This document shows positions 3,731-51,376 of a DNA stretch of 64,000 nucleotides, in pieces (position 1 is the first letter of the stretch; each line of letters opens with the position of its first letter). The position numbers were made by a program, and so were the translations under genes. The notes beneath the pieces are model-generated. The model saw only the letters and a list, made by a program, of their open reading frames with translations, was not told where the DNA came from and searched no databases. The stretch lies in IMG/VR virus record IMGVR_UViG_3300046536_000256, positions 1 to 64,000 of that record; one strand, written 5' to 3'.

Positions 3731-5434
3731 TTAACGCTTCATCGGTACAGCGGACAACTTGTCGCCCAGCAGGATGCTGCTTGCGTTGGCCAAGATCTTG
3801 GCAGTTTGCAAGCCGCCCTTCAGTGCGGTGATGGTAGCGTAGGCGGTGTCGTAAACCCCCAGCTCCTCACTGGTACCCGTCTCCCCGGTTGCCAGGTTGG
3901 TGCATGGAGGAACCACGTCACCCTCTATAGAGTTCCAGCGGAGTTCTTTGAACGGGGATACCTCGTCAGATGTCTGCCGCATCAGGTGGTTGTGCGAGGC
4001 GTAGCACACCTCGGCAAGCGCGGAGATGATCATGACCTTGATGGCGATTTCACGCTCATGCGGGGTGTCGGTGCCATCCTTGAATGGATCCGGCAGTTCC
4101 CTGTACAAACGAGTCAGAACACGCTTGCCCGCCGTTACCAGCGACGACCCCACGCCTGGCAACACACCGTTCACCAGAGCGCTCTTGACTGCCTTCACAA
4201 CGTCCTCGAACCGGTCAATGCGTTCTTTTACGTCCGAGTAGGTTTCGCCACCCACAAAGATCGTGATGAGCTCACCGCGCAGGTTACGGATACGCGTCTC
4301 GTTGAACTTGGCCCGCACACTGAAACGGTCACCCATTTCATACGAACTCAGTTCTTGTGCCACCGCATCAGCCCGAGCATTCAGCAACGCACGGGTTTCG
4401 TCGGGGATGTTGCTCAGGATCGAGCGAGTCCCATTGACAGTCAGGGTGCTCTGAACGATTGGAGCTCCGTGACTATTCAGCACGTCTTCCAAGTTGGTGT
4501 AGATCGGCGCGCCAAACATGGTCGCGATATCTTGCATCAACAGAGTGCCGACTGAACCACCGGCGTTGGTGTTGATAGCAACAAAGAACGCCGCGGGAAC
4601 ACCTTCCGGTTTACCAGTAACCCGTTCTTTAGCGCGCTGCGCTGCGGTAGCCGCGTTGAGGCGAGCCATGATCTGGCAAGTATCGTGTTCAACCGAACGA
4701 CCGATGACCAACACGGTACGACCACCTAGGCACATCGACAAGTTGATCAGCGTTTCCGAAAGGTCAGCCCCACGCCCCACATTACCGTCAATGATCAACG
4801 GGGTGAAGTCGGTGAAGTCGGTATCCCCACCATTGCCGTTCTTGGCAAAGCCTGGGTTACTGAACCCCATCTGAATCGGCAGGCCATTGGTGTGGACCAC
4901 TTTGTCTTCAGCCGTCTGCCCTTCCTTGAGTTCGATCTCAGGGTAGCGATCACCCGACGCCTTATAGATGTCGGTGATGATCTTGCTGAGTTCTTCGTCG
5001 TTGTTGGAGGAAGTCAGCGCCAGCTTGAACAGGCGTGGGTCGTCAACCGTAACGTTAACAGTCATGGCTTTCAGTTCTTCGATCACTGCGTTCATGCAGC
5101 TCTCAATGTACTTCTGTTCACGGAAGGTTGGGTGAGCGATAAAGACGTTGTACAACAACGACGTCAGCATCACGGTGGTGGTAGTGCCGTCGCCGCATTC
5201 GTGGTCGGTTTTGATCGCCGCTTCAGTAATCACGCGGTTGATCAGTTCGTGGCGTGGATCATCGAAGCGAATCGATTTAGCGACCGTCACGCCGTCCTTG
5301 GTGACCTTTACCGCGGTGCCGTTGGCAATGAACGCCAGCTTGCCGTTAGGACCCATGGTCGCGACTACAGCGCGTTTCACTTGGTCCACTACTTCTTTAA
5401 CGAATTCTTGGGTGTTAGCGATTGTTAGCATCAT
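3731..5434 (-). CDS. groEL: GroEL-like phage chaperonin
   Basis: TMGPNG, VTKDGVTVAKSI, GDGTTT ATP-binding motif, FED catalytic Asp region, GVLPGVG; 567 aa; no C-terminal GGM repeats. Confidence 0.95.
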   Translation of the reverse strand: MMLTIANTQEFVKEVVDQVKRAVVATMGPNGKLAFIANGTAVKVTKDGVTVAKSIRFDDPRHELINRVITEAAIKTDHECGDGTTTTVMLTSLLYNVFIAHPTFREQKYIESCMNAVIEELKAMTVNVTVDDPRLFKLALTSSNNDEELSKIITDIYKASGDRYPEIELKEGQTAEDKVVHTNGLPIQMGFSNPGFAKNGNGGDTDFTDFTPLIIDGNVGRGADLSETLINLSMCLGGRTVLVIGRSVEHDTCQIMARLNAATAAQRAKERVTGKPEGVPAAFFVAINTNAGGSVGTLLMQDIATMFGAPIYTNLEDVLNSHGAPIVQSTLTVNGTRSILSNIPDETRALLNARADAVAQELSSYEMGDRFSVRAKFNETRIRNLRGELITIFVGGETYSDVKERIDRFEDVVKAVKSALVNGVLPGVGSSLVTAGKRVLTRLYRELPDPFKDGTDTPHEREIAIKVMIISALAEVCYASHNHLMRQTSDEVSPFKELRWNSIEGDVVPPCTNLATGETGTSEELGVYDTAYATITALKGGLQTAKILANASSILLGDKLSAVPMKR

Positions 5435-5505: not shown

Positions 5506-5520
5506 AAATATACAAATAAA

Positions 5521-5549
5521 TAAAGCTCTCCGGGTTAGGGAGAGCTTTA
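5521..5549. terminator. stem-loop, putative terminator
   Basis: TAAAGCTCTC / GAGAGCTTTA inverted repeat directly after the stop at 5555; A-rich flank gives a U-tract on minus. Confidence 0.65.
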
Positions 5550-5554
5550 CTCAG

Positions 5555-5860: not shown

Positions 5861-6156
5861 CAGTGTCCTTCCTTACGTACCAGGTAGAACACGTTGGCCG
5901 GAGTTTGTACGAAGCGGAACTCGCCTTCGATCTTGCTCCTGCCATTCCAGTCTTTCAGCTCAAGGTAGACGTCCAGCTTTTTACCCAGGTTGTAAATCCC
6001 CTGAACCCGACCCAGCAGGTGATCGGTACTGACAGCTGCTACGGTTGGGTCAATACCGTAAACAACGTGGACACCCTCGTTCTTTTGCTGGTCCATCAAA
6101 CGCTTGAAACTATCAGCACTAAGTTTCTGAGCGAACTTCACGTTAGGCTGTGCCAT
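5860..6156 (-). CDS. hypothetical protein, paralog of 5555-5860
   Basis: 98 aa; stop/start overlaps on both sides. Confidence 0.7.
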   Translation of the reverse strand: MAQPNVKFAQKLSADSFKRLMDQQKNEGVHVVYGIDPTVAAVSTDHLLGRVQGIYNLGKKLDVYLELKDWNGRSKIEGEFRFVQTPANVFYLVRKEGH

Positions 6157-6701
6157 TACTCGGATTCCTTTTCAATGAGGTTTTGTTTCTGGATGTGGGT
6201 GAGGAGTTTCTCCAGAATGACATTGCCTTCTGGATATGAGAGTGGATCAAGGGGATCAACCGTTGCACCACTCTCAGTAAGGATAAAGGTGGGAACAACG
6301 CTAACGATTGGATACCGCCAACCGCGTAGTTCCTTGATCTCAGGAGTGGCCAAGAACGTCCAGGTGATCCCCATGCCGTTAAGGTTACAACGTGGATCAA
6401 ACAAACCAGCGTCTACCAATGCCTTCCACCGGGTATCAATCTCGAGCGGTGTTCTGGCGGTTACCCGTTCTACCATCTGGACGATGTCTTCGTCTTTGAT
6501 GTAAGTGTTATCCAGATGGGTGGTGGTAACGTTCCTGTGTGCCTGCCGAAGCTCTTCTGCTTCCCGGCGATGGCGGTTACCCGAGAACGTCATTTCCAAA
6601 CAACCGAAGGGTGCGTCACGAACTTCTTTAGTCCGAGTGTCACCACCCGAGCGTGTGACGCGTTCGCACAGCCACGCCCAACCTTTTCGCAACTGCTTCA
6701 T
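6156..6701 (-). CDS. hypothetical protein
   Basis: 181 aa, AAGGAG SD, coupled to the next gene. Confidence 0.7.
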   Translation of the reverse strand: MKQLRKGWAWLCERVTRSGGDTRTKEVRDAPFGCLEMTFSGNRHRREAEELRQAHRNVTTTHLDNTYIKDEDIVQMVERVTARTPLEIDTRWKALVDAGLFDPRCNLNGMGITWTFLATPEIKELRGWRYPIVSVVPTFILTESGATVDPLDPLSYPEGNVILEKLLTHIQKQNLIEKESE

Positions 6702-6721
6702 TGCAGTGCTCCTTATTTACC

Positions 6722-7240
6722 TTAGGTGTGTTTAACTGCTTTCGGTAGCTTTACTACCTGCGTCTTGCCGCCGGTATGAGGGTCCATATCCTTGGCAAGC
6801 TTAAGCGCCTTCTTGACACTTTTCCCCATCCGCAAAGCAGTGTCCACGTAAATCCCTCCCGACCCAATGGCCGTTGGAGGAAGACACTGCGTTAGAATGA
6901 AACTGTCCGGGATGTTGGGACCTTGCTTATAAGCCCCTTGCAGTAACCACCCATTATGAAACTCGTCGATCACGATGGCTGTAAAGTTCAGCTTGGACGG
7001 GATCTTCAAGTCGGTTCGATGGGTAATACCTTCCTTACACGCCAGCGCCTCTGTAAGGAAGGGTTCCACTCCAGGCATGCCGGCGCGACCAAAGGCAATA
7101 ACTTTCCGCCCCATGATCTTCCATTCTTCGCCCTCAGCCGGAGTCAGAATCTTCCGCACTTTTGCGTTGACCTTGGTCCCGTTGCGCGTGCGCATCGAAT
7201 CGGAAACCAGTTTGCCTTTAACCCAAACTACAGTAGTCAT
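6722..7240 (-). CDS. HslV/proteasome-beta-like Ntn-hydrolase peptidase
   Basis: N-terminal M-T-T nucleophile, D-S near residue 14, RKI lysine, AIGSGGIY (cf. HslV AIGSGGPY), terminal DPHTGG. Confidence 0.75.
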   Translation of the reverse strand: MTTVVWVKGKLVSDSMRTRNGTKVNAKVRKILTPAEGEEWKIMGRKVIAFGRAGMPGVEPFLTEALACKEGITHRTDLKIPSKLNFTAIVIDEFHNGWLLQGAYKQGPNIPDSFILTQCLPPTAIGSGGIYVDTALRMGKSVKKALKLAKDMDPHTGGKTQVVKLPKAVKHT

Positions 7241-7845
7241 ACTGTCTTCCTTGCTCGTTCTGTTATTACGATCTTCTGAATGGTCTGGGAGTACAGCTTT
7301 GGCCAGCTATCCGGAATATCGTCGCGATTAAAAATGGTCAGGGGAAAATGACTGGCGCGAGGATCGTCGAAGCTCTCGAACTGGGCGTCCGGAATCTCTT
7401 CCTCGTCATCAGGTTCATCGTCGGGACCATGCGCGTCGAACCAGTCATCCTGAGCGTCTTGGTCATGCGACTTCTCTTGCTCATCCACCTCCAAACGACG
7501 GAGATGTTTAGGCAGAGTTTGACACTCTTTGCACACGATCTTGGTCCACTTCTCCCGGGGGTATTCATCCACGAAATAAGGGGTGTGGGAGATCGCGTCG
7601 CAACGGGGTACTTCTTTCCCGCAGTCAGAACAGTCGACTGGTTCAGTTCGACGCTCTTCCAAGTACTTCACGTAGCACGGGTTACAGAGCAGATACATCT
7701 CCGAACCCATGCTGTCGTTCTCAGAAGTATGACCGTAAGCTTGATCACCTTCTTTCAGGTGTTCGCAATTACCGCCCTCGCAAACACCACCGCTCTCACC
7801 GAACCCCACAGATTTGGAGGTGCGCCCGTGAGTCATCCAGTTCAT
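7237..7845 (-). CDS. Cys-rich zinc-finger protein with acidic tail
   Basis: CEGGNCEH, CNPC, CSDC, CKEC, followed by a D/E-rich stretch. Confidence 0.65.
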   Translation of the reverse strand: MNWMTHGRTSKSVGFGESGGVCEGGNCEHLKEGDQAYGHTSENDSMGSEMYLLCNPCYVKYLEERRTEPVDCSDCGKEVPRCDAISHTPYFVDEYPREKWTKIVCKECQTLPKHLRRLEVDEQEKSHDQDAQDDWFDAHGPDDEPDDEEEIPDAQFESFDDPRASHFPLTIFNRDDIPDSWPKLYSQTIQKIVITERARKTV

Positions 7846-14409: not shown

Positions 14410-14538
14410 TTACTTGCTAACCGCAGTACCACTAGCACCTTTGTAATACACCAGCGTCAAAGCCCCGGCAGAACAACCACCGAAGACCAGAACCACCATG
14501 AGGATAATTCCCCGCATCAAGATAGAACGCTTAGCCAT
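14410..14538 (-). CDS. small membrane protein (42 aa)
   Basis: Hand-found: MAKRSILMRGIILMVVLVFGGCSAGALTLVYY...; overlaps the upstream stop. Confidence 0.55.
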   Translation of the reverse strand: MAKRSILMRGIILMVVLVFGGCSAGALTLVYYKGASGTAVSK

Positions 14539-15334
14539 TACTTTTGCTCTTGAACCATTGATCTAGAGTTTTAGGTCGACGCTCCGGCATGTAGCCAACG
14601 GCGCCCATGTGGAAACCAAAGCGCCCAATCGGTTTGATCCGCGATTGGTTACAGATCTCCCGGAACCGATTACGAGATAGAGGAACACTCGGGCCATTGG
14701 TGTGGTCGATGACAAGATTGTCAAGGGCTGTTCTCTCAACCAGTGCCCGCATGACTTGTCTCAGTCCAACCGCAGTGAAACCTTTACCGAAGCCCTCCAA
14801 AGTAGCTCCGTCATGCAGAACGGCAAAGACTTTGATCTTGGGATAGTCGGTGTAGATTTCAATGCCTTCAGACGAGGAGGCCTTGATTAGCACCCAGTAT
14901 TCACGGATTACCGCTAGGACCGGGTAGTCCCTTTTGAACAAGCCATTGCTCGTAGCCTGCTTGAACATACGTTCGATTTCTGACGAATACATCTCGTGCT
15001 CCTTCTGGGTATTGCGAGAGCCGTCAACGCAGATTGGATGCGGAGTCAATTCTCCGGTGATCAACTTCTTGAGCGCCGCGCGCATTACATCTTCAGCCAA
15101 GCGGACGTGGTTAGTCCCGTCCGCTACAGGGAAGCCCATACCGACGTGGTCTTTCCCATACCTGTGAACACTCAGCATCACTTGGTTCTCAGAGTAGTCC
15201 GAATAGATAGTCAGACCGCCGTCAGCTGTTTTGTGGATCTTGACCTCATGCCCGCCCAGCAATACAACCTTTTCAATACCGTCAAACAGCCCGTTGTCGA
15301 CCAGCAAACCAAACAACTTGCGTAAAAGTTTCAT
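14531..15334 (-). CDS. hypothetical protein with internal domain duplication
   Basis: NGLF...IY(S/T)DY...VMRA occurs twice. Confidence 0.7.
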   Translation of the reverse strand: MKLLRKLFGLLVDNGLFDGIEKVVLLGGHEVKIHKTADGGLTIYSDYSENQVMLSVHRYGKDHVGMGFPVADGTNHVRLAEDVMRAALKKLITGELTPHPICVDGSRNTQKEHEMYSSEIERMFKQATSNGLFKRDYPVLAVIREYWVLIKASSSEGIEIYTDYPKIKVFAVLHDGATLEGFGKGFTAVGLRQVMRALVERTALDNLVIDHTNGPSVPLSRNRFREICNQSRIKPIGRFGFHMGAVGYMPERRPKTLDQWFKSKSNG

Positions 15335-15381
15335 AGATCGTTCCTACTAAACGCCTCCCCGGTTAGGAGGAGGCGCTATCG

Positions 15382-15978
15382 TTACTGTTGCTTACCGAAC
15401 TTGATCGGTTCTTGCTTGCCGGTATCGAATGCCGCCGCAGTCTTGGAGTCAGACACCACTTGACAAGACTTCTTCAGATCGAGACGAGGGAAGCCAGCAA
15501 AAGACAGGAGCTTGCCGCGCCAGAACCAGCCGAGCATGTTCTCGTACGTCCCACAGGCTTCCAGTTTTCGCGATTGGGCAATTTGGAATTCCTTCCGCCC
15601 ACCTTCGATCACGTCTTGTATTTTCAAGTAGAGTTTGCTGTTCAGTGTGGGGTTCTGTTCTTTGATCCACTGAACAACCGCCTTGTTCCCGTCAGGTCCA
15701 TTACGACTTTGGAAGGTCGTTCGCAACGTATCCTTCAAGTCGCCGGCATACATGCTGGCAACGCCGGCCGTTTCCTGGATGGTCAAGGTGACCGTACTCA
15801 GTACGTTTTCCGAGTCCTTGTCCAGCTTGGTGATGGTGGTTTCGGCGTTAACCGCCGAGTCGTGCGCGCTGGTGTACGTCCCCATAATCGTCACGCCGAC
15901 CAAAAGCAAACCAACCAACAGCACACCCAGGATACAACCTACCAGCATCCCGGCGGACATTTTCTTCGTAGTACTCAT
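15382..15978 (-). CDS. LemA-like membrane-anchored helical protein
   Basis: One N-terminal TM, coiled-coil body, C-terminal YENMLGWFWRGKLLSFAGFP resembling the LemA YN..i..FP...iA...GF end. Confidence 0.5.
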   Translation of the reverse strand: MSTTKKMSAGMLVGCILGVLLVGLLLVGVTIMGTYTSAHDSAVNAETTITKLDKDSENVLSTVTLTIQETAGVASMYAGDLKDTLRTTFQSRNGPDGNKAVVQWIKEQNPTLNSKLYLKIQDVIEGGRKEFQIAQSRKLEACGTYENMLGWFWRGKLLSFAGFPRLDLKKSCQVVSDSKTAAAFDTGKQEPIKFGKQQ

Positions 15979-17084
15979 GCGAATCTTTCCTTAGTCTGAA
16001 AAACATCTTCTTTAATGAAGAAGTAAGTGATGGCACCCGTTACCGAAAGGTTCAGTAGCACCAGTAGAACAACCCACCAAGTTGGCGGGTCTATCGCTTC
16101 CGTCATGTAAGCGAAGTCTTCGTTTGGCACGCGATTGAAATCTTTCTTGATCAAAGCATACTGCTCTTTAACCACGTCGATTCCAAACGCACGCTCGTAC
16201 GTCAAGGTTTGCAATTGCTTCAACAGAATCTGGTTGTTCTGTCCATCGGCGAACGACATTGCCTTTGCCCATTGGATCTGCTCGTTGTCATCGACACCGT
16301 AAAACAAGATGACGTCGTTCTTCCGAGGACCCTTCCAGTACTCCATGAGTGCATAGAAATAGTCTGGACCGTTTTTGGTTACGACCAAGATTATGTTCAT
16401 TTGCTTTAGGACGGCATCTTTAGTCAGCTGGTTGTTCAGCCAAATGTTGATGTCGTCATAATCCTGCTTGGTATCGTCCACTACACGGTAGAAGTTGTAA
16501 TAGTCGTACGGCAACGGATAAGAAGGCAACACCCCCACATACTTCGCAGAGATGGTTGGGTCTGTCTTGAAGCGGTTATCATCGATCAGGAGGTAGTTTC
16601 GCACCATCTCCGTCTCAGACGCAGGATCACCCACTTCCACGTCGCTCCAGCGCGGCGGCTCGCCCAAGCCACGGCGGTCTATTCGGTCAATCGTGTATCG
16701 GGTACCCAACGAGGTACGCACGTCCCAGTCGACGTCATAGGAGTGCTCATGGCAATACTTCGGCGAGCACGACCGTGAGGTAGTTGCTTTGCCCTTCGAG
16801 TCACGAGAGGTTGACGTTGTACACGTTTCCCCGCACTGATACGAATGACTGCATGAAACCTCATCACGATCTTTGCTGGTTACGTAACCGTTGATCACAT
16901 CAAAGTCGTGTGACTTCATAACCCCCGCCATTGCCAGCAACCCAAGACACAGCAACGTGGATACACCCACTGCCCCCAGTTGGCACAGCCACTCTTTCCA
17001 GCAGATCTTGTGGCCCCAGAAGAACTTGCAAAACGTGATCAAAATAATGGAGGGTATAGCCATTATCGCAAGGTAGAATCCCAT
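15975..17084 (-). CDS. membrane protein with Cys-rich segment and TPM(DUF477)-like domain
   Basis: Two N-terminal TMs, Cys cluster (CSHSYQCGETC...CSPKYC), MNIILVVT...YWKGPRKNDVILFYG, C-terminal TM. Confidence 0.5.
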   Translation of the reverse strand: MGFYLAIMAIPSIILITFCKFFWGHKICWKEWLCQLGAVGVSTLLCLGLLAMAGVMKSHDFDVINGYVTSKDRDEVSCSHSYQCGETCTTSTSRDSKGKATTSRSCSPKYCHEHSYDVDWDVRTSLGTRYTIDRIDRRGLGEPPRWSDVEVGDPASETEMVRNYLLIDDNRFKTDPTISAKYVGVLPSYPLPYDYYNFYRVVDDTKQDYDDINIWLNNQLTKDAVLKQMNIILVVTKNGPDYFYALMEYWKGPRKNDVILFYGVDDNEQIQWAKAMSFADGQNNQILLKQLQTLTYERAFGIDVVKEQYALIKKDFNRVPNEDFAYMTEAIDPPTWWVVLLVLLNLSVTGAITYFFIKEDVFQTKERFA

Positions 17085-17142
17085 TCCGGTTTCCTAATAG
17101 TCCTAAGGAAAGACCCCGGTGGTTAGCCGAGGTCTTCGAGGG

Positions 17143-40576: not shown

Positions 40577-43465
40577 TTAGAACACGTCGCGATGCGTAAA
40601 GAACTGGTTAGGTCCATCCGCACCATCATCAACAAAGCAAGGGATCGCTGAACCGCGGCGAGTAGCACTAACAACGTGGTTACTCATCACCATGTAATCC
40701 TTAACCTGCTGAAGTACGCCGTTTACTGCAATGCCGAACATCACTTCATTGTTGGCGACCTCCCGACGGACATCAGAACCCAACACTGCAATAACGTCAC
40801 CGTAACGAACCAAGTAACAGTACGTGGTTCCCGCAGGGTTAACCTTGAGTGCAAATTCCTCACCCAAGACCATCGCTTTACCGCCAATCACCAACCGGCC
40901 GCCCGCAGGTACGCGAACCCACCCAGCTTCGTTGACGTTGAATGGATCAACCTTGGTCACACCACCCACTTCCAACATGGTGTTTGTGAAAGCCCCATTG
41001 GTTGCGTCGTATTGGAACACCCCCTTGTTAGGGATTAGAATCGGAGGAAGGAGTTCGTCCACCAAGTCAAACTGCTGGGTCCCTGGGTAGAGACGAACGA
41101 CGTTGGTCTTGACCGGTGTGAACGCCGGGAAGGTAGACCCCCCAAACCCAGCACAGGTAAAGCTGATGTCGCCGTAGTTGTTACCGAATGGACGGGTCAA
41201 CACAAAGCCGGTGGTGTTTGCGTCGATGTTGACGATTTGCAAGTCGGAGTAATCCATCCGCGTACCGTCACCCGAACCCGACTTCCGATTCCCTACAGCC
41301 ACAGGCCCGCTAGCCGCGGTTATCGGCTTCAACGCTACCCCGTTGGTCTGTTTAAAGTCCAACGTAAAGATGTTGTTGATCACCGAGTATCTTGCTGCTG
41401 CTGCTTCAGCGTAACTCACCCCGTCAGAGACCACCACGAGCGCCTTGGTGCCCGTTACCGCAAAGACCTGGATCTCTGGTACCCGGAGGGTTGGGTCAAC
41501 CCCTGGGTTGAGCACAGCAGCCCTGTCGGTTAGATCGCGCATTACCGCTTGCATACTGAGCATGCTTGCAACAGCCATCTCGACATCAGCACCGACTGTC
41601 AACACTTGGTTTGCGAACGTGACACTGGCTTTACCCACATGCCGGTTGGCCGACGTAAACGCCAACGCATTGTACCCAACACCCGCCGAGGCTTTGTTAA
41701 CCGCAACCGCCATCGACACCGGTATCAGTCCAATGTCATCCATTGGGGTTCTTACTTCCGGCAGCCTTACGCCAAACACACCATCACCCGTTTGAGTGCT
41801 AACGATGCTAGCGTTGTTCCACGTCAGCAACGACCAACTGAACAAACCAGTACCGGGATTCAACCCGTAAACCAGATGTTGAGTAACCGCCGCGTTATGG
41901 GTCACCGGGATAATACGCTCGGGCAATGGACCGAATGGTGCATGACGACTTGGGGCAAAGACTTCGGTTATTGCATCCGACGGGTCTGCCACAGGACGTT
42001 GAGCCAGCATCCAGTCGATCACACTGGTGTAATCCGTGCGGTAACGCTTAACCCGCATCGCCAGCTTAGAACTACGGGCTTTAACCATGAGCCCCGAGTT
42101 CAACAACACACCAGGCGACTGACTAATGTTGTTAAGATCGAATGGGTTGTTCACAGTGAAGAACGAAGACCCGGCCGTAGGCAACAAGTTCGCATCCAAG
42201 GTGTCCTTGACGCGACTCCCGATGGTTTTGAACAACGCTGTCCCACCGGCCACCAACGTACCCGGAATGATTGACTCGGTAAACGAGAGCACCAGCTTAC
42301 TGACCAATGCGCCTTGAGTGACAACCACCCCCACGCTGACGTTCAAGTACATCTCGAAGTCAGTGGAGTTCCACACCAACACAGTAACCGGATCAGGTCG
42401 AGCCGGGTCCCCGGCAATGGTAGCGCCAGCCGGCAAGGTGAGGAAGTCGGCAAGGTTATACGTGTGGAAGCCGTTAGCCGGACCCGGGGCGGGTGAGGCA
42501 CTTCCCATCTTGTCAAATGACGCCAGGTAAGAGCTGTTCACCAGTTCCGTCATGGATGGAGCCGTTGTCACGGCATTGACCGAGAAGAACCGATGATCAA
42601 TCCGCAACACACCCGCTGCCAACGCTACCGAGATCCCCAAGCCTTTATAGACCGCGTTGGCGAAGTTGTTGTAGAGGAGGTAGTTACGGTTAGCCGCTGG
42701 AAGAGGCAGTGTGGAAGCGAAGTTGTAAATCTTCTTATCGCCCAAGGGACGGAAGAACCCCACCTTACCGTCGGTTGTATCCCCGCCGGTCATGTTCCAG
42801 TTCGCCCCGGTGTAGCGCGCGGCTAGGTTAGTGACCTCACTGAGACGAGCACGGGACAAGCCTTTCAACGGCAACCCCACAAACAAACTCTGTTTACTGT
42901 AACGCCCTTCATCCGACCGTGGGGAATAGATCAGACGATCGCCATCAATCAGAATCGGCACCCGGCCATTGGACAGCAGATAACGGCTCGGTTCAGGTGT
43001 TGCTGGGAGAACCGTTTCGTAATCGTCCGGGTAGTAGTACGACGCGAACTGAAACACCCCGTTCTGCTGGTAAAGAGTGGGGTCGAAGTCAGCGGTGTTC
43101 GCATCCAAGGAGGCCTTGGCCCCAGCAGGCGTTACAAAGGCGTTTACGCTGGCGTAACTGATGGACTCAGCCAATGTAGCGGTTCGGAAGTTATCCTTCT
43201 TGTCGAGCCCCACAGTGTCTTTGGTCTCACCGTGCGCCGCACCCCGTATTGCCAAGTGTGCATCAATCGGGGCAATACTGCTGTTGATCCACTGAGTAAC
43301 GTGGGTATCGAGCCCATCCAGCTGATCTTTAATGCTCTTATTGAATTCGCGAACCCGGTCTTCAGCTTTAACCGTGAAGTCATTGAGCTTGTGGATCACC
43401 GCCCCAAAGGTAGGTTCCGGATTCTCAATGACAGGAGGTTCCGCTATAGGCCTGACAATAATCAT
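40577..43465 (-). CDS. large tail/baseplate-associated structural protein (paralog)
   Basis: 962 aa, beta-rich; HGETKDTVGLDKKDNFRTATLAE repeat and C-terminal TRRGSAIP shared with its neighbours. Confidence 0.7.
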   Translation of the reverse strand: MIIVRPIAEPPVIENPEPTFGAVIHKLNDFTVKAEDRVREFNKSIKDQLDGLDTHVTQWINSSIAPIDAHLAIRGAAHGETKDTVGLDKKDNFRTATLAESISYASVNAFVTPAGAKASLDANTADFDPTLYQQNGVFQFASYYYPDDYETVLPATPEPSRYLLSNGRVPILIDGDRLIYSPRSDEGRYSKQSLFVGLPLKGLSRARLSEVTNLAARYTGANWNMTGGDTTDGKVGFFRPLGDKKIYNFASTLPLPAANRNYLLYNNFANAVYKGLGISVALAAGVLRIDHRFFSVNAVTTAPSMTELVNSSYLASFDKMGSASPAPGPANGFHTYNLADFLTLPAGATIAGDPARPDPVTVLVWNSTDFEMYLNVSVGVVVTQGALVSKLVLSFTESIIPGTLVAGGTALFKTIGSRVKDTLDANLLPTAGSSFFTVNNPFDLNNISQSPGVLLNSGLMVKARSSKLAMRVKRYRTDYTSVIDWMLAQRPVADPSDAITEVFAPSRHAPFGPLPERIIPVTHNAAVTQHLVYGLNPGTGLFSWSLLTWNNASIVSTQTGDGVFGVRLPEVRTPMDDIGLIPVSMAVAVNKASAGVGYNALAFTSANRHVGKASVTFANQVLTVGADVEMAVASMLSMQAVMRDLTDRAAVLNPGVDPTLRVPEIQVFAVTGTKALVVVSDGVSYAEAAAARYSVINNIFTLDFKQTNGVALKPITAASGPVAVGNRKSGSGDGTRMDYSDLQIVNIDANTTGFVLTRPFGNNYGDISFTCAGFGGSTFPAFTPVKTNVVRLYPGTQQFDLVDELLPPILIPNKGVFQYDATNGAFTNTMLEVGGVTKVDPFNVNEAGWVRVPAGGRLVIGGKAMVLGEEFALKVNPAGTTYCYLVRYGDVIAVLGSDVRREVANNEVMFGIAVNGVLQQVKDYMVMSNHVVSATRRGSAIPCFVDDGADGPNQFFTHRDVF

Positions 43466-43527
43466 AGCTCTACTCCGTGTTGAATGTGGAAAGTCAAAGG
43501 GGAATTACTTCCCCATGACCGTGGTCG

Positions 43528-46500
43528 TTACGGCAACAGCTCAGCGTTATGCAGGAAGGCAAACGTACCTTCGTCCTGAGGGAACCCGGTACTGACTGGG
43601 ATAATGCCACCCTCACGCGTGTAACTCAGCTGATACTGTCCGACCATCAACGGCTGGTGCCGAGTAATCGAGAGGATCTGCTGGCTGTTGGTTACCACTG
43701 TTGCCGCTTTGAGCATGTTGCCGGATTTACGCATCTTGACTTCGGTCACAAGATAACGAGGTTTGTCGTCCTGTACCGTTGCGTAAATGTAGAACGTTTT
43801 GTTTTGTGGCGCTGGATCAATGTCACGCAAATCGATCGTCCCACCCTCCATGGCGTACGCTGTGCCGTTTACCAACATCCGGATGTTATCTTGCAGGAAG
43901 AGAGTCCAACCTGTTTCCGGATAAGCCGAGGCCACCAAGTAATAGTCGAGGCTATTATCCGGGTTGGTCTTCTTGATCAACGCACCCGCCCCGCCTGTGA
44001 GCATGTACGGCTGTGGGTTACCCGCCGAGATCGAGGTGCTGTCAGGTGTGTTGCCAGCAAGGGTAACGTCCGCCATCCCGATCTTAGGAAGCATGGTGAC
44101 AATGTCCCCTTGCGTCCAACTGGATGAACCGCCGTAAACACCGGTGACCTTGTTAGTTACTAGGTCAATGTCGAAAAGACACAGTTGTTTGGTGTTAATG
44201 GTCTGTGTGGTGACAGTCGAAAACGGACCCATCACGTACACTTTCAGCTTGCCATTGTCCCGGTACGCCGTGAGCAACGCTTTCTGTTTCAACGCGGTGG
44301 CGAGTAGCAGGTTAGCGTCGGCCATCTTCACGTTAACGCAGGTGCGTACATGAGGAGGGGCATCCAACACCGTGATGTCTTTAATCCAGAACACGCCCGG
44401 ATGATCAGCGTTGGGGGTTTCGACAACCGGGGTAAACAGCACCACTTGGGTACGGGTTTGCGAGAGGGTCGCGTCGAAGAAGTAGATCAGCGCGATACCA
44501 ATGTTAAGCCCGTTGAACATCCCTCCCGCTTCACTGCCCAGAACGTTCAAGCTGAAGCCCCAGTACTTAGTAGACTGGAACACAGCCGGGATCATCGCTT
44601 TAAGCTTGTCGATGATGTTCTGGCGAATGCCGTAGAACGAATCCGCGGCATACGTCGCTTTCTTCAATCCCGGGTCCAACGTTCGAGTAACCGTCCGTGG
44701 GAAAGAGATCAACACGTTGTTACCAGCGGGTGCTTTGAACAACGTATTACGCGGGAACGTTTGGTTAGCCGAAGAGTAAGACGCCCAACCGCAGGCACTG
44801 AAACTCGTGCTCCCACACTCCACACCCCCAGCCGCCAACTCAGCCGCAGAACCAGTCATACCGATGGTGAGGTCGTTATGTCCTAGGTTGGTCTCGTACA
44901 CCGCCCCTGTTAATGGGCGCGAGAAAATGTCCCCTATCGAGAGGTTGTTGACCCCCGGACGGACTTGATACCCACCCGTGACTAACCGCGTGTAAATTTT
45001 GCGGGTACCCGAGCTCTGTTCCACTGCCCCAAAGATCTCGCTGTCCGCGGTGTAGGTAACCGATCCTGGGTAGGTCCCGTTAAGAATCGGAGACTTCAGC
45101 ACGGGCTTCAAGATACGACGGAAGCTCAACTGAATCGCTTGAAGATCCAAACGACCACTTAACAGACTGGCATCCGATGTCTTGTTCTTGTAACGACTGA
45201 CCTCGGCAACCGACGGGAAGATGTTGCCATCCTGAATTGTCGAGGTGACGACGTCGCCGTTATCCAAAATCACCGTAGAGGCATTACTGGACTGGAAGGT
45301 GGCGTTGTAAAAATTGGTAAGGTACAGGTCCATGTACCCTGACCGTTCCGCTGGGGTGGAGTCCGTGAAGCCAACACTCAGCGCGGGTAATTTAGCGATT
45401 TGGGTCATCACCCCCGTAACACAGTTGAGCTCCCACCCGATGTCGGTCATCAATGTAATGTTGATGTTAACACCCGGCGCTGTGTAAATAGCGGCAAACC
45501 CCGGCATGATGTGGATGTAGTTGACGTTCGGCACACCCGGCTTCGGACACGAGACCACCATCGTCCGACCACTTTTAGACAGCGTAGCGATTGGCTGACG
45601 GAACGACCAAGGGCCGTACTTGATGATGGTGTTGTTGCCGTCCTTTGTGGTTGCGTTGGGTTGAACGTAACTGGCGTTGGTGAATGGGGTTCCATCCCAA
45701 TCCGTGTACGTTACCTTCAGCAGTTGCCAAGCCACAGCAAGACCGCTTTGAATATCCGACACCTTAACCCGGAAGAACGCATAGTTGTCAGCGTAAGCCG
45801 TCCCATAGTTCTGCACCAATACCAGATAGTCGCCCATGTGATGGATGGTGGCTCGGTTGTTGTTCACCCACGGGGCGCCAGCGAACAGTGCGTTAACAGC
45901 GGTCATGTCAACCCGGACATACCGATGCGCACTTGGATCAAAGGTGCCGTTGGTCAAGCAGACGAACCAGTCAGGGGTAGCAGGGTTGCCCACCATCATC
46001 GCCTTACCGTTACTGCCGGCAATAATCGCGGTGGGGTTAATCCCCAAAGCTACCAATGAAGCCGGAGCATACTTGTACCCGGTGTAAATGATCTTCCCCG
46101 CTGGCTGGTCATAGTTCTCTACGTATGAATAGTAGAGCCCTTGCTGACGACCGTCGTAGTGGTTGGTGAGCATCATCAACATCCCACTGTTTTCCATACA
46201 GAAACCAGAGGTGTCGTAGAGCGCGCCCAAACCTTCGAAGGACCCATCGATGTTCGGCGGAATGTAGCTGTCGCCCGCAAAACGGCTGAGCGGCATGATT
46301 CCCTGAAACATTGCTGCGTCAGTGTCAGCCTTATACGACTTGGCTAACTGACCCACACCCATCGGGGTACTGAAGACGTCACTACGAATCCCCGCCAGTT
46401 CTTCTGCCAGTGTTGCGGTGGCGAAGTTGTCGTGGTTCCCCATGGTGATGTCAAACTTGGTGGTCTGGTGGGGAACGTTGTAATTCTCGTCGTGGGCTTT

Positions 46501-47115
46501 CAGTTGGTTCAGACGAGTGGTCTTCCCCGTCTTTAAACGATCGAAGGCGAGGCGTGAGGCAGCGGTAACCTTATCGTTGGCAGCAGGGTCGCGTGAACTG
46601 GAGAGCTTTTCCAGGTAAACGAAAAACCAGGTCAGCTCATACCAGTCAGTGATCTCGGTTTTAATGCTGTGCGAATGCAGCGACGACGGCAGGGTCGGCG
46701 GCATGTTAAAGACTTTGTCCCAGGTCAGTGGGCGTTTGCCGTTCTGAATCTGGTCCATCCAGTTGACCAAGTCATTGCGCGGAACGAAGTACGCCCCGAT
46801 GCTTTGATAGTCAACCGAAACTTGGCTGTTAGCATCCAAGATGTTTTGTGGCAAACGAATGAACGTTTTGATAGAACGCCCGGTAACCTCGCAGAAAGGA
46901 ACAAACTCCTCTTCCAAGAAGTAATCCCGGTCAAGCACCATTACCGCGCCACGTTGGTCGTACACGGTTACAAGCGCGGGTTCAGCGAAGAAGGGTGCAC
47001 CGTTCGGGAGAACCCACGGACAAGTCTTGTCGGTGAGCGCAATGACTTCCCCGACAACAGTGTTGACGGGTTCAGTGCCATGAATGTCAAACTTTACCGG
47101 TCTGATAAGGTCCAT
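43528..47115 (-). CDS. large tail fibre/baseplate structural protein (paralog)
   Basis: 1195 aa; APFF anchor module, NIDGSFEG, TFYIYA...ELLP ending. Confidence 0.75.
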   Translation of the reverse strand: MDLIRPVKFDIHGTEPVNTVVGEVIALTDKTCPWVLPNGAPFFAEPALVTVYDQRGAVMVLDRDYFLEEEFVPFCEVTGRSIKTFIRLPQNILDANSQVSVDYQSIGAYFVPRNDLVNWMDQIQNGKRPLTWDKVFNMPPTLPSSLHSHSIKTEITDWYELTWFFVYLEKLSSSRDPAANDKVTAASRLAFDRLKTGKTTRLNQLKAHDENYNVPHQTTKFDITMGNHDNFATATLAEELAGIRSDVFSTPMGVGQLAKSYKADTDAAMFQGIMPLSRFAGDSYIPPNIDGSFEGLGALYDTSGFCMENSGMLMMLTNHYDGRQQGLYYSYVENYDQPAGKIIYTGYKYAPASLVALGINPTAIIAGSNGKAMMVGNPATPDWFVCLTNGTFDPSAHRYVRVDMTAVNALFAGAPWVNNNRATIHHMGDYLVLVQNYGTAYADNYAFFRVKVSDIQSGLAVAWQLLKVTYTDWDGTPFTNASYVQPNATTKDGNNTIIKYGPWSFRQPIATLSKSGRTMVVSCPKPGVPNVNYIHIMPGFAAIYTAPGVNINITLMTDIGWELNCVTGVMTQIAKLPALSVGFTDSTPAERSGYMDLYLTNFYNATFQSSNASTVILDNGDVVTSTIQDGNIFPSVAEVSRYKNKTSDASLLSGRLDLQAIQLSFRRILKPVLKSPILNGTYPGSVTYTADSEIFGAVEQSSGTRKIYTRLVTGGYQVRPGVNNLSIGDIFSRPLTGAVYETNLGHNDLTIGMTGSAAELAAGGVECGSTSFSACGWASYSSANQTFPRNTLFKAPAGNNVLISFPRTVTRTLDPGLKKATYAADSFYGIRQNIIDKLKAMIPAVFQSTKYWGFSLNVLGSEAGGMFNGLNIGIALIYFFDATLSQTRTQVVLFTPVVETPNADHPGVFWIKDITVLDAPPHVRTCVNVKMADANLLLATALKQKALLTAYRDNGKLKVYVMGPFSTVTTQTINTKQLCLFDIDLVTNKVTGVYGGSSSWTQGDIVTMLPKIGMADVTLAGNTPDSTSISAGNPQPYMLTGGAGALIKKTNPDNSLDYYLVASAYPETGWTLFLQDNIRMLVNGTAYAMEGGTIDLRDIDPAPQNKTFYIYATVQDDKPRYLVTEVKMRKSGNMLKAATVVTNSQQILSITRHQPLMVGQYQLSYTREGGIIPVSTGFPQDEGTFAFLHNAELLP

Positions 47116-47181
47116 TGTGTTAGCCTTTTAAAAGAGAGGGGAGGAGGGGTTCACCCTGCCTCCTCTCCAACACGTTGTTGT

Positions 47182-50799: not shown

Positions 50800-50800
50800 A

Positions 50801-50832
50801 CAACTGATCTATGCGGTGGCATAGATCAGTTG
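50801..50832. terminator. 14-bp stem-loop
   Basis: CAACTGATCTATGC-GGTG-GCATAGATCAGTTG after the Tfa stop. Confidence 0.7.
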
Positions 50833-50841
50833 CGGGGCTGG

Positions 50842-51369
50842 TTATGGAGAGGTTGGCCAGTCAATGGTGGTTGGGTAACCGGCTTGTTGGTCGACCTTGC
50901 TCAACGCCAACTTGTAAGCCGCGTAAGCTTTAAAGGTCTTCGCGTCCGCATCGCTCAACAGTCCGGCAATGAAAGCATCCGCCATTCCGATCGTAGCTTG
51001 GTTGGCAACCCCCATCAACTGGTCACGTTGGGCCTGAGCGGCCAAAGACGCATCAAGAAGCCACACGGTACCATTCCAGGCGTAATGAACCCCAGGACAA
51101 GGAACCCGTGTATATTCACTAGGCAACTCCTCGAGGGTACGCCACTCCTTCGGAGCACCAGTGGTTACACTGTAGACCGTCCCACGTTGATCGATGACTT
51201 GGGTTGGAACCCCGTCAACGTTTACCCACACCTTACCGGCGTCTGCGGCCACCAACAGATCTTCCACCTCGATAGCGTTGCTCGGCAATGGGAAACCCAA
51301 CCCCGGAACTTCGCAAATGGTAATCGGTCCGTACAAAATACCCAGTTCATCGAATTCGTAAATATTCAT
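50842..51369 (-). CDS. tail fibre assembly chaperone (Tfa-like)
   Basis: DQRGTVYS..TG, HYAWNGTVW, helical C-terminus ending QQAGYPTTIDWPTSP; directly follows the fibre gene. Confidence 0.88.
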   Translation of the reverse strand: MNIYEFDELGILYGPITICEVPGLGFPLPSNAIEVEDLLVAADAGKVWVNVDGVPTQVIDQRGTVYSVTTGAPKEWRTLEELPSEYTRVPCPGVHYAWNGTVWLLDASLAAQAQRDQLMGVANQATIGMADAFIAGLLSDADAKTFKAYAAYKLALSKVDQQAGYPTTIDWPTSP

Positions 51370-51376
51370 AAATACC

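What the first reader, a model, noticed from the sequence alone, without database searches (positions are those of the whole stretch)
15382..17084. Phage version of a LemA plus TPM-domain two-gene membrane system
Seen: overlapping genes, one a TM-anchored helical bundle ending like LemA, the other a 3-TM protein with a Cys-rich periplasmic segment and a TPM-like core (NIILVV...YW.G..KNDVIL). Established: bacterial lemA genes often sit beside TPM/DUF477 genes, and their function is poorly understood. Inference: a periplasm-facing complex that remodels or monitors the host inner membrane during infection.
Basis: partly seen in the sequence, partly recalled or inferred. Interest (0 to 1): 0.6.

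Follow-up and report, generated by a model that had tools for sequence, protein, structure and literature searches.

The report
Phage LemA-like plus TPM-like membrane pair
Two overlapping genes of a 233-kb rhizosphere jumbo phage encode very diverged relatives of the bacterial LemA and TPM-domain membrane proteins; the pair is always linked, occurs in about 1% of sequenced phages, and its function is untested but now open to experiment.

Summary
Two minus-strand genes, 15975-17084 (369 aa, P0001) and 15382-15978 (198 aa, P0002), overlap by ATGA. P0002 has one N-terminal TM helix and a helical domain. It misses Pfam LemA itself, but its family profile finds the LemA crystal structure 2etd (E 3.4e-7) and aligns to canonical bacterial LemA (HHalign 97.3%, E 2e-11; TPM control 0.6%). 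P0001 has 3 TM helices, a Cys/His-rich beta domain and a TPM-like domain (residues ~180-320). The four best of 48,161 PDB representatives are TPM domains (Z 8.7-9.3), and the sequence signal is weak but specific. In 78 of 78 testable viral loci the LemA-like gene lies directly downstream on the same strand, and no third gene is conserved. About 480 of 50,697 phage records carry each gene. Bacteria show the same partnership in the opposite order (lemA then TPM; adjacent in 22 of 23 TPM-bearing genomes sampled). Complex prediction gives weak support (0.46; controls 0.00). The "virion structural protein" label on the P0002 family has no proteomic support where I could check. The function is inferred, not shown: a periplasm-facing complex that remodels or stabilises the host inner membrane. 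I class it as a new variant of a known kind, of moderate interest.

The parts
15975..17084 (-). P0001 gene: 369-aa, 3-TM inner-membrane protein with a Cys/His beta domain and a TPM-like domain (PHROG 2087)
   Evidence: ORF and translation; PHROG 2087 E 3e-117; AF2 pLDDT 94.4; start ATG 17084 preceded by AGGAA at 17091-17095; M1 and P11 invariant among close homologues
17019..17081 (-). P0001 TM helix 1 (residues 2-22); N-terminus predicted periplasmic
   Evidence: AF2 helix 2-22; family N-tail carries no charge
16914..17000 (-). P0001 TM helix 2 (residues 29-57); the short TM1-TM2 loop is the only net-positive loop, so predicted cytoplasmic
   Evidence: AF2 helix 29-57; family mean K+R 2.2 against D+E 1.3 in the loop
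16599..16910 (-). P0001 beta-rich Cys/His domain (residues 59-162). C78-x-H80 and C111-x-x-H114 sit at two beta-hairpin turns. It looks like a zinc-ribbon-type metal or disulfide site; no known family was found.
   Evidence: Strands 59-76, 81-94, 100-112, 117-124; C84 invariant and C78, H80, C111, H114 at 90% or more in 59 sequences; C78, C84, C88, C106, C111, H80, H114 invariant in 22 closer sequences; median 7 Cys and 4 His here against 0 Cys in the TPM part; no Pfam or PDB sequence hit
16125..16547 (-). P0001 TPM-like alpha/beta domain (residues ~180-320), including the W250-x-G252-xxx-N256-D257-V-I-L motif
   Evidence: VIA-align Z 8.7-9.3 to 3pw9, 7tbr, 5anp and 8c7i over 180-318; Foldseek top hits are TPM domains; an Atlas cluster that is 100% PF04536 aligns on 180-318; 12 of 59 family members hit PF04536; HHalign E 2e-4 with the motif aligned
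16008..16082 (-). P0001 TM helix 3 (residues 335-359), followed by a short C-terminal tail predicted cytoplasmic
   Evidence: AF2 helix 335-359; 57 of 59 members have 3 TM
15382..15978 (-). P0002 gene: 198-aa single-pass membrane protein of the LemA superfamily (PHROG 1383)
   Evidence: ORF and translation; PHROG 1383 E 5e-65; ATG 15978 overlaps the P0001 stop (ATGA) and follows AAGGAAAG
15880..15954 (-). P0002 N-terminal TM anchor (residues ~9-33), N-in and C-out
   Evidence: AF2 helix starts at residue 9; family N-tail K+R 1.4 against D+E 0.1, and after the TM 0.8 against 1.5
15463..15879 (-). P0002 LemA-like helical domain (residues ~34-172), predicted periplasmic
   Evidence: HHalign to canonical LemA over query positions 21-171, 97.3%, E 2.1e-11; A3 profile against 2etd E 3.4e-7 over positions 28-158; 21 of 136 members hit PF04011
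17109..17137 (-). GC-rich hairpin with a CTAACC loop between the upstream gene's stop and the P0001 start; a possible terminator or processing site that bounds the pair on its 5' side
   Evidence: Sequence; hairpin scan. Not flagged by the consensus terminator scan
15350..15377 (-). GC-rich hairpin with a CTAACC loop directly after the P0002 stop; a possible terminator that bounds the pair on its 3' side
   Evidence: Sequence; hairpin scan. Only 3 T follow, so it was not flagged

Best explanation
The two genes are a self-contained, phage-borne and highly diverged version of the bacterial LemA/TPM membrane system. P0001 probably inserts in the host inner membrane with its N-terminus out, a short cytoplasmic TM1-TM2 loop, a large periplasmic part (Cys/His beta domain plus TPM-like domain) and a third TM helix. 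P0002 is a type-II membrane protein whose LemA-like helical domain also faces the periplasm. They appear to be translationally coupled (ATGA overlap) and most likely form a heteromeric complex in the inner membrane. By analogy with LemA proteins, which restructure membranes and drive vesiculation when overproduced, and with TPM domains, which have been proposed to chaperone the assembly of membrane-linked complexes, I infer that the complex reshapes or stabilises the host cytoplasmic membrane during infection. The purpose would be to keep the membrane intact and energised until programmed lysis. Shown here: homology, architecture, strict linkage and distribution. Inferred: topology, complex formation and the membrane-remodelling or stabilising role.
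For: LemA homology: 21 of 136 diverse family members hit PF04011 (best E 1.8e-7) and no other family is hit by more than 2. The family profile finds the LemA structure 2etd at E 3.4e-7, next best 0.044. HHalign against 25 canonical LemA gives 97.3%, E 2.1e-11, 151 columns, with a TPM control of 0.6%. 2etd is also the rank-1 Foldseek hit, though weakly, and Atlas look-alike clusters are named LemA or carry PF04011. TPM homology: the top four of 48,161 PDB representatives are TPM domains, Z 8.7-9.3, rmsd 3.0-3.3 A, 124-129 residues. Foldseek and the Atlas agree. 12 of 59 members hit PF04536 and no other family is hit by more than 1. HHalign gives E 2-3e-4 with the W-x-G...N-D-V-I-L motif aligned, against a LemA control of 0.2-0.7%. 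Linkage: 78 of 78 testable IMG/VR loci have the LemA-like gene directly downstream on the same strand. No third gene is conserved. 484 and 475 phage records carry the two genes, with the same host breakdown. 8 of 13 bacterial-assembly copies keep the pair. One 553-aa natural fusion exists. Bacterial parallel: in 101 Pseudomonadota genomes, 22 of 23 with a TPM gene have it next to lemA. Complex: ipSAE 0.46 (runs 0.41, 0.46, 0.54), best of 3 controls 0.00, verdict weak support. The mark was reached by 58 of 80 solved complexes and 2 of 110 mismatched pairs, but at 0.60 or under by only 7 of those 80 and by both mismatches that passed. The runs share at least 81% of contacts and the partner pLDDT is at least 69. 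Topology: positive-inside counts, and a Cys-rich beta domain. Function by analogy: LemA/MamQ membrane remodelling (preprint 10.64898/2026.10.21.759321); TPM as an assembly chaperone that partners PspA and zinc-ribbon proteins (PMC11237479; PMC12419801).
Against: Neither window protein hits PF04011 or PF04536, even at E<=10, and the whole phage genome has no PF04011 hit at E<=1. The P0002 model is mediocre (pLDDT 69) and its fold match to 2etd is not significant (E 0.69, TM 0.35). The TPM sequence signal is only E ~1e-3 to 1e-4. The complex score falls in the range that the tool calls weak. The fusion is known from a single metagenomic contig and could be an assembly or indel artefact. Gene order is reversed relative to bacteria, and P0001's architecture differs from bacterial TPM partners, so the function may have diverged. 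PaLemA1's soluble domain is described as cytoplasmic, so orientation varies within the family. The LemA functional data come from one unreviewed preprint that relies on overproduction. No expression, localisation or phenotype data exist for any phage homologue, and no paper on them was found.
Confidence: 0.55

Rival explanations
1. The pair is a superinfection-exclusion or inter-phage competition device. As a periplasm-facing inner-membrane complex, it would block DNA entry or cell-wall penetration by later-arriving phages, like T4 Imm/Sp (comparison from my own knowledge).
For: Membrane location with large periplasmic domains. It lies among uncharacterised non-structural genes with no PHROG match. 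It is carried only by large virulent phages. It behaves as an autonomous cassette set in unrelated neighbourhoods.
Against: Exclusion proteins are usually lineage-specific and evolve fast. This pair is conserved at 25-50% identity across phages of Vibrio, Acinetobacter, Sinorhizobium, Delftia, Aeromonas and Enterobacterales, which points to a conserved host feature as the target. It also has clear homology to a housekeeping-type bacterial membrane system. No PADLOC hit.
Confidence: 0.15
2. The pair belongs to the lysis machinery or its timing. P0002 would act like an i-spanin or antiholin-type type-II membrane protein, with P0001 as its regulator.
For: P0002 has the outline of an i-spanin (N-terminal TM plus a helical periplasmic domain, with two Cys in its subfamily). 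It gives faint PHROG hits to holin (E 3e-4, TM region only) and to Rz-like spanin (E 0.1). In PhiW-14 and AAS21 an endolysin or cell-wall hydrolase lies 1.1-2.4 kb away.
Against: The LemA link is orders of magnitude stronger than the holin or spanin hits. No lipoprotein (o-spanin) or holin gene is conserved next to the pair. The Cys pair is absent from most of the family. Proximity to lysis genes is not general, as ICP1, RAY, LIMEstone1 and this window show.
Confidence: 0.1
3. P0002 is a virion structural protein, as PHROG 1383 and many RefSeq records label it.
For: PHROG 1383 is annotated 'virion structural protein'. The PhiW-14 gene 87 product and several Ackermannviridae homologues carry that label.
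Against: In LIMEstone1 the homologues are ORF194 and ORF195, and neither is among the 39 virion proteins confirmed by mass spectrometry. RAY gp46 is absent from the RAY/Deimos-Minion mass-spectrometry table. The protein is a TM-anchored LemA homologue that is obligately paired with a 3-TM protein. The pair lies outside structural gene blocks. The label looks propagated by similarity.
Confidence: 0.05
4. The resemblance to LemA and TPM is convergent or spurious, and these are unrelated phage membrane proteins.
For: Direct Pfam, NCBIfam and PADLOC scans of the two proteins are negative. The narrow 18-sequence profile finds nothing in the PDB. Helical bundles and alpha/beta sandwiches are common folds.
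Against: Independent lines converge with clean cross-controls. The two families are also partnered in bacteria, which is very unlikely by chance.
Confidence: 0.03

Closest known systems
Bacterial lemA-TPM(-TPM) operons (Pfam PF04011 plus PF04536, e.g. the BA41/BA42 type)
   Same: The same two protein superfamilies are encoded side by side on one strand. Both have a single-pass LemA-type protein and a membrane-anchored TPM-domain protein. In my sample of 101 Pseudomonadota genomes, 22 of 23 TPM-bearing genomes have a TPM gene within about 1 kb of lemA. Profile-level homology was shown for both partners.
   Different: Gene order is reversed: phage TPM-like then LemA-like, bacteria lemA then TPM in 21 of the 22. 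Bacteria usually have two or more tandem TPM genes (15 of 22), the phage has one. In the 8 bacterial partners printed, the architecture is signal/TM, TPM, TM and a Gly-rich tail (Gly 0.33-0.65 of the last 40 residues; 13 of 21 have 2 hydrophobic segments). P0001 instead has 2 TM, a Cys/His beta domain, TPM and 1 TM, with no Gly-rich tail. Sequence divergence is such that neither window protein passes the Pfam thresholds.
LemA family proteins with experimental data: MamQ, P. aeruginosa LemA1 and LemA2 (preprint 10.64898/2026.10.21.759321); crystal structure TM0961, PDB 2etd
   Same: An N-terminal membrane anchor plus a helical domain of about 150 residues. The family profile aligns over nearly the whole 2etd chain (E 3.4e-7).
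   Different: The phage clade is separate and does not reach Pfam's threshold. PaLemA1 is described with a cytoplasmic domain and PaLemA2 as a periplasmic outer-membrane lipoprotein, whereas P0002 is predicted to be inner-membrane anchored with a periplasmic domain. Membrane-remodelling activity has not been tested for any phage member.
B. subtilis pspA-ydjGHL type operons (PspA, zinc-ribbon membrane protein YdjG, TPM protein YdjH; PMC11237479)
   Same: A TPM domain is combined with a zinc-ribbon-type Cys-rich membrane protein and a membrane-remodelling partner. P0001 unites a Cys/His hairpin domain and a TPM domain in one chain and pairs with a LemA-like protein.
   Different: The remodelling partner there is PspA (ESCRT-III-like), not LemA, and the domains are on separate proteins. 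No sequence relationship between P0001's beta domain and YdjG was tested or shown.
PHROG 2087 (unknown function) and PHROG 1383 ('virion structural protein')
   Same: The window proteins are full-length members (E 3e-117 and 5e-65).
   Different: The PHROG annotations give no function for 2087. For 1383 the label is not supported by the virion proteomes I could check. The LemA/TPM relationship is not part of those annotations.

Membership tests
LemA (Pfam PF04011) | The protein itself matches the PF04011 HMM at or above the gathering score (26.2 bits) | tested here: not met
   P0002 has no PF04011 hit even at E<=10. The whole 233-kb genome has no hit at E<=1.
LemA (Pfam PF04011) | Family-level (superfamily) homology by profile methods | tested here: met
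   21 of 136 family members hit PF04011, best E 1.8e-7. A3 profile against 2etd: E 3.4e-7. HHalign against 25 canonical LemA: 97.3%, E 2.1e-11, 151 columns; TPM control 0.6%.
LemA (Pfam PF04011) | Architecture: one N-terminal TM helix followed by a helical domain of about 150 residues | tested here: met
   AF2 secondary structure. 134 of 136 members have 1 TM, as do 24 of 25 canonical LemA.
LemA (Pfam PF04011) | Fold superposable on the LemA crystal structure 2etd | tested here: inconclusive
   2etd is the rank-1 Foldseek hit of 350,542 chains, but with E 0.69 and TM 0.28/0.35, and the model pLDDT is only 69.
LemA (Pfam PF04011) | Membrane-restructuring or vesiculation activity on overproduction | not testable with these tools
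   Reported for 13 bacterial LemA proteins in preprint 10.64898/2026.10.21.759321. No data exist for phage members.
TPM domain (Pfam PF04536) | The protein itself matches the PF04536 HMM at or above the gathering score (22.1 bits) | tested here: not met
   P0001 has no hit at E<=10. 12 of 59 family members give weak hits, best E 1.3e-3.
TPM domain (Pfam PF04536) | Alpha/beta/alpha sandwich fold superposable on solved TPM domains | tested here: met
   VIA-align: 3pw9 Z 9.3, 7tbr 9.0, 5anp 9.0, 8c7i 8.7, with 2kw7, 9h70, 2kpt and 6adq_J also listed; rmsd 3.0-3.3 A over 124-129 residues for the top four, model range 180-318. Foldseek probability 0.99 to 3pvh/3ptj, E 6e-3. An Atlas cluster that is 100% PF04536 aligns 127 residues at rmsd 3.1.
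TPM domain (Pfam PF04536) | Profile-profile sequence homology to canonical TPM domains, including the W-x-x-G...N-G-x-L-L-V core motif | tested here: inconclusive
   HHalign E 1.6e-4 to 3e-4, probability 40-50%, 66-118 columns. W250-x-G252..N256-D257-V-I-L aligns with the TPM W-k-i-G..N-G-x-L-L motif. LemA control 0.2-0.7%.
TPM domain (Pfam PF04536) | Usual bacterial partner architecture (signal/TM, TPM, TM, Gly-rich tail) | tested here: not met
   P0001 has 2 TM, a Cys/His beta domain, TPM and 1 TM, with no Gly-rich tail. Of 21 canonical partners, 13 have 2 hydrophobic segments, and the 8 printed have Gly fractions of 0.33-0.65 in the last 40 residues.
TPM domain (Pfam PF04536) | Phosphatase/nucleotidase activity or metal binding (itself disputed for the family) | not testable with these tools
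   The literature is divided (PMC13456599; PMC12419801).
Bacterial LemA-TPM two-gene system | The two genes are adjacent on one strand and co-inherited | tested here: met
   78 of 78 testable viral loci. Bacterial control: 22 of 23. The order is reversed in phages.
Virion structural protein (PHROG 1383 label) | Detected in purified virions | tested here: not met
   LIMEstone1 ORF195 is absent from the 39-protein virion mass-spectrometry list. RAY gp46 is absent from the mass-spectrometry table.
Two-component spanin (Rz/Rz1 type) | An i-spanin with an adjacent or embedded outer-membrane lipoprotein gene, within a lysis cassette | tested here: not met
   No conserved third gene near the pair in 80 loci. 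The PHROG Rz-like hit is only E 0.1.

The most novel reading that the evidence does not exclude
The pair is a widespread phage-encoded membrane-maintenance device, a viral counterpart of the LemA/TPM/PspA envelope-stress machinery. On this reading, large virulent phages use it to keep the host inner membrane sealed and energised, or to build extra membrane or vesicles. That would set lysis timing and blunt abortive-infection systems that kill by depolarising the membrane. The conserved Cys/His beta domain, absent from the bacterial partners, would be the phage-specific sensor or docking element.
Probability: 0.15. Interest if true: 0.8.

Novelty: new variant of a known kind. Interest (0 to 1): 0.55.

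Why it matters
About 1% of sequenced phage genomes carry this obligately linked pair (484 and 475 of 50,697 records). Carriers span unrelated lineages and include model and applied phages: Ackermannviridae used for biocontrol, ICP1 of Vibrio cholerae, the nucleus-forming Erwinia phage RAY, RaK2-like giants and some T5-like phages. In databases the two genes are 'hypothetical' or, probably wrongly, 'virion structural'. Linking them to LemA and TPM turns two dark-matter phage families into a testable hypothesis, at a time when LemA is being proposed as a driver of bacterial membrane remodelling. Phage versions could also help the bacterial field. They are compact and come from genetically tractable phages, and they suggest that the LemA-TPM partnership, not either protein alone, is the functional unit.

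Tried and rejected
Direct scans of both proteins against Pfam, NCBIfam and PADLOC gave nothing relevant.

The narrow 18-sequence P0002 profile found nothing in PDB sequences; only the 136-sequence profile reached 2etd. The P0001 profile found nothing meaningful in PDB sequences.

megablast of the region against phage records found no match, so there is no close sequenced relative.

The search for related loci in bacterial genomes failed with A3 and A2 because no stretch was conserved enough. With A1 it found no relative. With A4 it found 13 loci, mostly MAG contigs that are probably mis-binned phage.

The Achromobacter genome that carries a copy has no canonical LemA.

PHROG scans of nine neighbouring genes found nothing, so the local context gives no functional clue.

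The consensus promoter and terminator scan found nothing above shuffles.

Literature searches for LemA with TPM, with phage or with virion proteomics found no paper on phage homologues. The 'LemA' hit in the LIMEstone paper is the author name Lemattre. The RAY cell-biology paper does not mention gp45 or gp46.

Only DNA contig-level rhizosphere runs hold the sequence and none is RNA. Read laying was therefore not used and expression could not be assessed.

I do not claim that its fold is new.

The holin, spanin and virion-structural readings were considered and set aside for the reasons given under rivals.
Full report
WHAT IS THERE. The window is the first 64 kb of a complete 233,283-bp virus record with direct terminal repeats. 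It was assembled from rhizosphere metagenomes. It encodes typical jumbo-phage functions: a GroEL-like chaperonin, an NAD-dependent ligase, an SbcC-like protein, tail-fibre paralogues and a large virion protein. At the stated coordinates there are two minus-strand ORFs, 15975-17084 (369 aa, P0001) and 15382-15978 (198 aa, P0002). The P0002 ATG overlaps the P0001 stop as ATGA and follows AAGGAAAG. The P0001 ATG follows AGGAA. GC-rich hairpins that share a CTAACC loop lie just upstream (17109-17137) and just downstream (15350-15377) of the pair. The consensus terminator scan did not flag them.

ANATOMY. The P0001 AlphaFold2 model is confident (pLDDT 94.4, pTM 0.82). It shows helices at 2-22, 29-57 and 335-359, long beta hairpins at 59-132, and an alpha/beta domain at about 180-320. 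Across 59 homologues the conserved residues include D60, K71, C78, H80, C84, C111, H114, D117, W120, P143, W250, G252, N256 and D257. In 22 closer homologues five Cys and two His are invariant. C78-x-H80 and C111-x-x-H114 lie at the turns of two hairpins. I read this arrangement as zinc-ribbon-like, which is an inference because no coordinates were available to me. The beta domain has a median of 7 Cys and 4 His, while the TPM-like part has none. P0002 has one N-terminal TM helix and is then all-helical, but its model is mediocre (pLDDT 69). Family-wide, 57 of 59 P0001 relatives have three hydrophobic segments and 134 of 136 P0002 relatives have one. Charge counts make the P0001 TM1-TM2 loop and the P0002 N-tail the positive, and so cytoplasmic, parts. 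That places both large domains in the periplasm.

IS IT LemA? Directly, no. Pfam, NCBIfam and PADLOC give nothing for P0002, and the whole genome has no PF04011 hit at E<=1. At family level, yes. An exhaustive profile search found 990 representatives of the P0002 family. Of 136 diverse members, 21 individually hit PF04011 (best E 1.8e-7), and no other Pfam family is hit by more than 2. The 136-sequence profile finds the LemA crystal structure 2etd at E 3.4e-7 over positions 28-158, with the next hit at 0.044. I then collected 25 canonical LemA proteins from a sample of Pseudomonadota genomes. HHalign of the phage family against them gives 97.3% probability, E 2.1e-11, over 151 columns from the TM anchor to the end of the domain. 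The cross-control against TPM gives 0.6%. Foldseek ranks 2etd first but not significantly (E 0.69). A language-model look-alike search points to viral clusters named LemA or partly carrying PF04011.

IS IT TPM? Again there is no direct Pfam hit. Fold evidence is good. The four best of 48,161 PDB representatives are TPM domains: AtTLP18.3, Rhom172_1776, BA41 and Psb32. They score Z 8.7-9.3 at rmsd 3.0-3.3 A with 124-129 residues aligned, all on model residues 180-318, and four more TPM structures appear lower in the list. Foldseek lists the same set (best E 6e-3, probability 0.99). In the ESM Atlas the first match outside the protein's own family is a cluster that is 100% PF04536, on residues 180-318. 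The sequence evidence is weak but specific. 12 of 59 family members hit PF04536 (best E 1.3e-3) and no other family is hit by more than one. HHalign against 21 lemA-adjacent bacterial TPM proteins gives E 1.6e-4 to 3e-4 (probability 40-50%), against a LemA control of 0.2-0.7%.

DO THE GENES GO TOGETHER? tblastn finds P0001 relatives in 484 and P0002 relatives in 475 of 50,697 phage records, with nearly identical host breakdowns and adjacent coordinates. Carriers include AAS21 (Demerecviridae), ICP1, PhiW-14, RAY (Agricanvirus), LIMEstone1 (Ackermannviridae), RaK2-like giants and T4-like Aeromonas phages. All records listed are 100-470 kb. Of 80 IMG/VR loci retrieved with the P0001 family, 78 have a P0002-family gene directly downstream on the same strand. 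The commonest spacing is the same -4 overlap. The other two contigs end about 100 nt after the first gene. No other gene family is shared across lineages, so this is a self-contained two-gene cassette. One 553-aa protein joins the two in a single ORF (1-333 P0001-like at E 3e-49; 366-552 P0002-like at E 3.7e-33). Its linker is compatible with both domains lying on the same side of the membrane, but it is known from one 9.5-kb contig only. Only 13 of 185,579 species-representative genomes hold a relative, and most of these are MAG contigs. The one isolate copy (Achromobacter anxifer) lies next to RecE-like and UvsX-like phage genes. Complex prediction gave weak support: ipSAE 0.46 (runs 0.41, 0.46, 0.54), best of three controls 0.00. 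The mark was reached by 58 of 80 solved complexes and 2 of 110 mismatched pairs, but at 0.60 or under by only 7 of those 80 and by both mismatches that passed. The runs agree in at least 81% of contacts and the partner pLDDT is at least 69. Because the prior from synteny is high, I take this as mild corroboration.

THE BACTERIAL PARALLEL. In 101 Pseudomonadota genomes, 75 have LemA and 23 have a TPM gene. In 22 of those 23 a TPM gene lies within about 1 kb of lemA. In 21 of the 22 the order is lemA then TPM, and 15 of the 22 have at least two tandem TPM genes. The phage cassette differs in several ways. The order is reversed. There is one TPM-like gene. P0001 carries two extra N-terminal TM helices and the Cys/His beta domain. 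It lacks the Gly-rich tail seen in the bacterial partners I examined.

HOW IT PROBABLY WORKS. A recent preprint reports that LemA proteins (MamQ, PaLemA1, PaLemA2 and others) restructure membranes and drive vesiculation when overproduced, and that they associate with PspA and divisome proteins (10.64898/2026.10.21.759321). Comparative genomics proposes that TPM domains help assemble membrane-linked complexes rather than act as phosphatases, and notes their partnership with PspA and zinc-ribbon membrane proteins (PMC11237479; PMC12419801). Experimental data on TPM domains are mixed (PMC13456599). From this I infer that P0001 and P0002 form a periplasm-facing inner-membrane complex that reshapes or stabilises the host membrane during infection. 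Conservation across phages of very different hosts suggests that the target is a general membrane feature. Nothing about function is shown. My estimates are about 0.9 for the homology, 0.65 for a physical complex and 0.35 for the membrane-remodelling or maintenance role.

RIVALS. Superinfection exclusion, a lysis-timing or spanin-like role, and a virion component were all considered. The 'virion structural protein' label of PHROG 1383 is not backed where I could check it. LIMEstone1 ORF194 and ORF195 are absent from its 39-protein virion proteome, and RAY gp46 is absent from the RAY mass-spectrometry table. The holin and spanin hits are faint and limited to the TM or coiled region, and no lipoprotein or holin partner is conserved.

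NOVELTY AND SCORE. No paper on phage LemA or TPM homologues was found. Some automatic cluster names already say 'LemA family', so the LemA likeness is not entirely unseen. The TPM identity of the partner, the obligate pairing, the reversed order and the added Cys/His domain appear to be undescribed. I class it as a new variant of a known kind, with interest 0.55.

LIMITS. Expression could not be assessed because no RNA runs exist, and read laying was not used.

Noticed in passing
window 5517-5553, 15100-15125, 15350-15377, 17109-17137 (all minus strand): Four GC-rich hairpins share a CTAACC loop, all on the transcribed strand. 4 of the 40 CTAACC sites in the window lie in such loops. One (5517-5553) has a clear T-run, two bracket the LemA/TPM pair, and one lies inside the coding region of 14531-15334. 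This may be a phage-specific terminator or RNA-processing motif.
   Followed up: partly
window 14410-14538 (-): A 42-aa ORF overlaps the end of the 267-aa gene upstream. It has a hydrophobic N-terminus ending in VFGG-C, which resembles a lipoprotein signal, so it may be a very small lipoprotein. It has no PHROG match.
   Followed up: no
window 15975-17084 and 15382-15978: The public gene calls for both proteins start at internal Met codons: residue 8 of P0001 (362 aa) and residue 7 of P0002 (192 aa). The upstream ATGs have better ribosome-binding sites, and the extra residues are conserved in homologues, so the longer forms are more likely correct.
   Followed up: partly
window 40577-53233 (-): Four consecutive large genes (962, 1195, 1205 and 618 aa) share an N-terminal module (PHROG 2163) with tail-fibre-like families. 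Two of them also match PHROG 3573 over nearly their whole length, with a faint third match. This looks like a paralogous set of tail fibres or receptor-binding proteins.
   Followed up: no
window 3731-5434 (-): A phage-encoded GroEL-like chaperonin (PHROG 5725, E 9e-128).
   Followed up: no
L085 (Achromobacter anxifer LMG 26857, contig of 486,889 bp), module at 5947-7678: This is the only isolate genome among 185,579 species representatives with the pair. It lies next to RecE-like exonuclease and UvsX-like recombinase genes, so it is probably a resident phage-derived element. The genome has no canonical LemA.
   Followed up: partly
L084, L086-L096 (MAG contigs labelled Paceibacterota, 'Rickettsia typhi', Saccharibacteria, Kaiserbacteria, SR1 and others): Contigs in metagenome-assembled 'bacterial' genomes carry the phage pair. 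Most are short, and they are probably mis-binned phage contigs rather than genes of those organisms.
   Followed up: no
L159 (JGI contig Ga0181608_113487), 1012-2673 and 4548-5141: This single contig encodes the fused P0001-P0002 protein (553 aa). It also carries a Gad2-family gene (PF26128) three genes downstream of the fusion (4548-5141).
   Followed up: no
L158 (Dickeya phage LIMEstone1) 3624-4193; L157 (Erwinia phage RAY) 2402-2995: The RefSeq/GenBank labels 'virion structural protein' and 'putative structural protein' on the LemA-like gene are not supported by the published mass-spectrometry tables of these phages. The label appears to have spread by similarity, possibly from PhiW-14 gene 87.
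   Followed up: yes
Bacterial loci L097-L156: In the sampled Pseudomonadota, lemA is usually followed by two or more TPM genes, the second much more diverged (E 1e-7 to 1e-17 against 1e-36 to 1e-46). This suggests a three-gene unit in bacteria, where the phage has two genes.
   Followed up: partly
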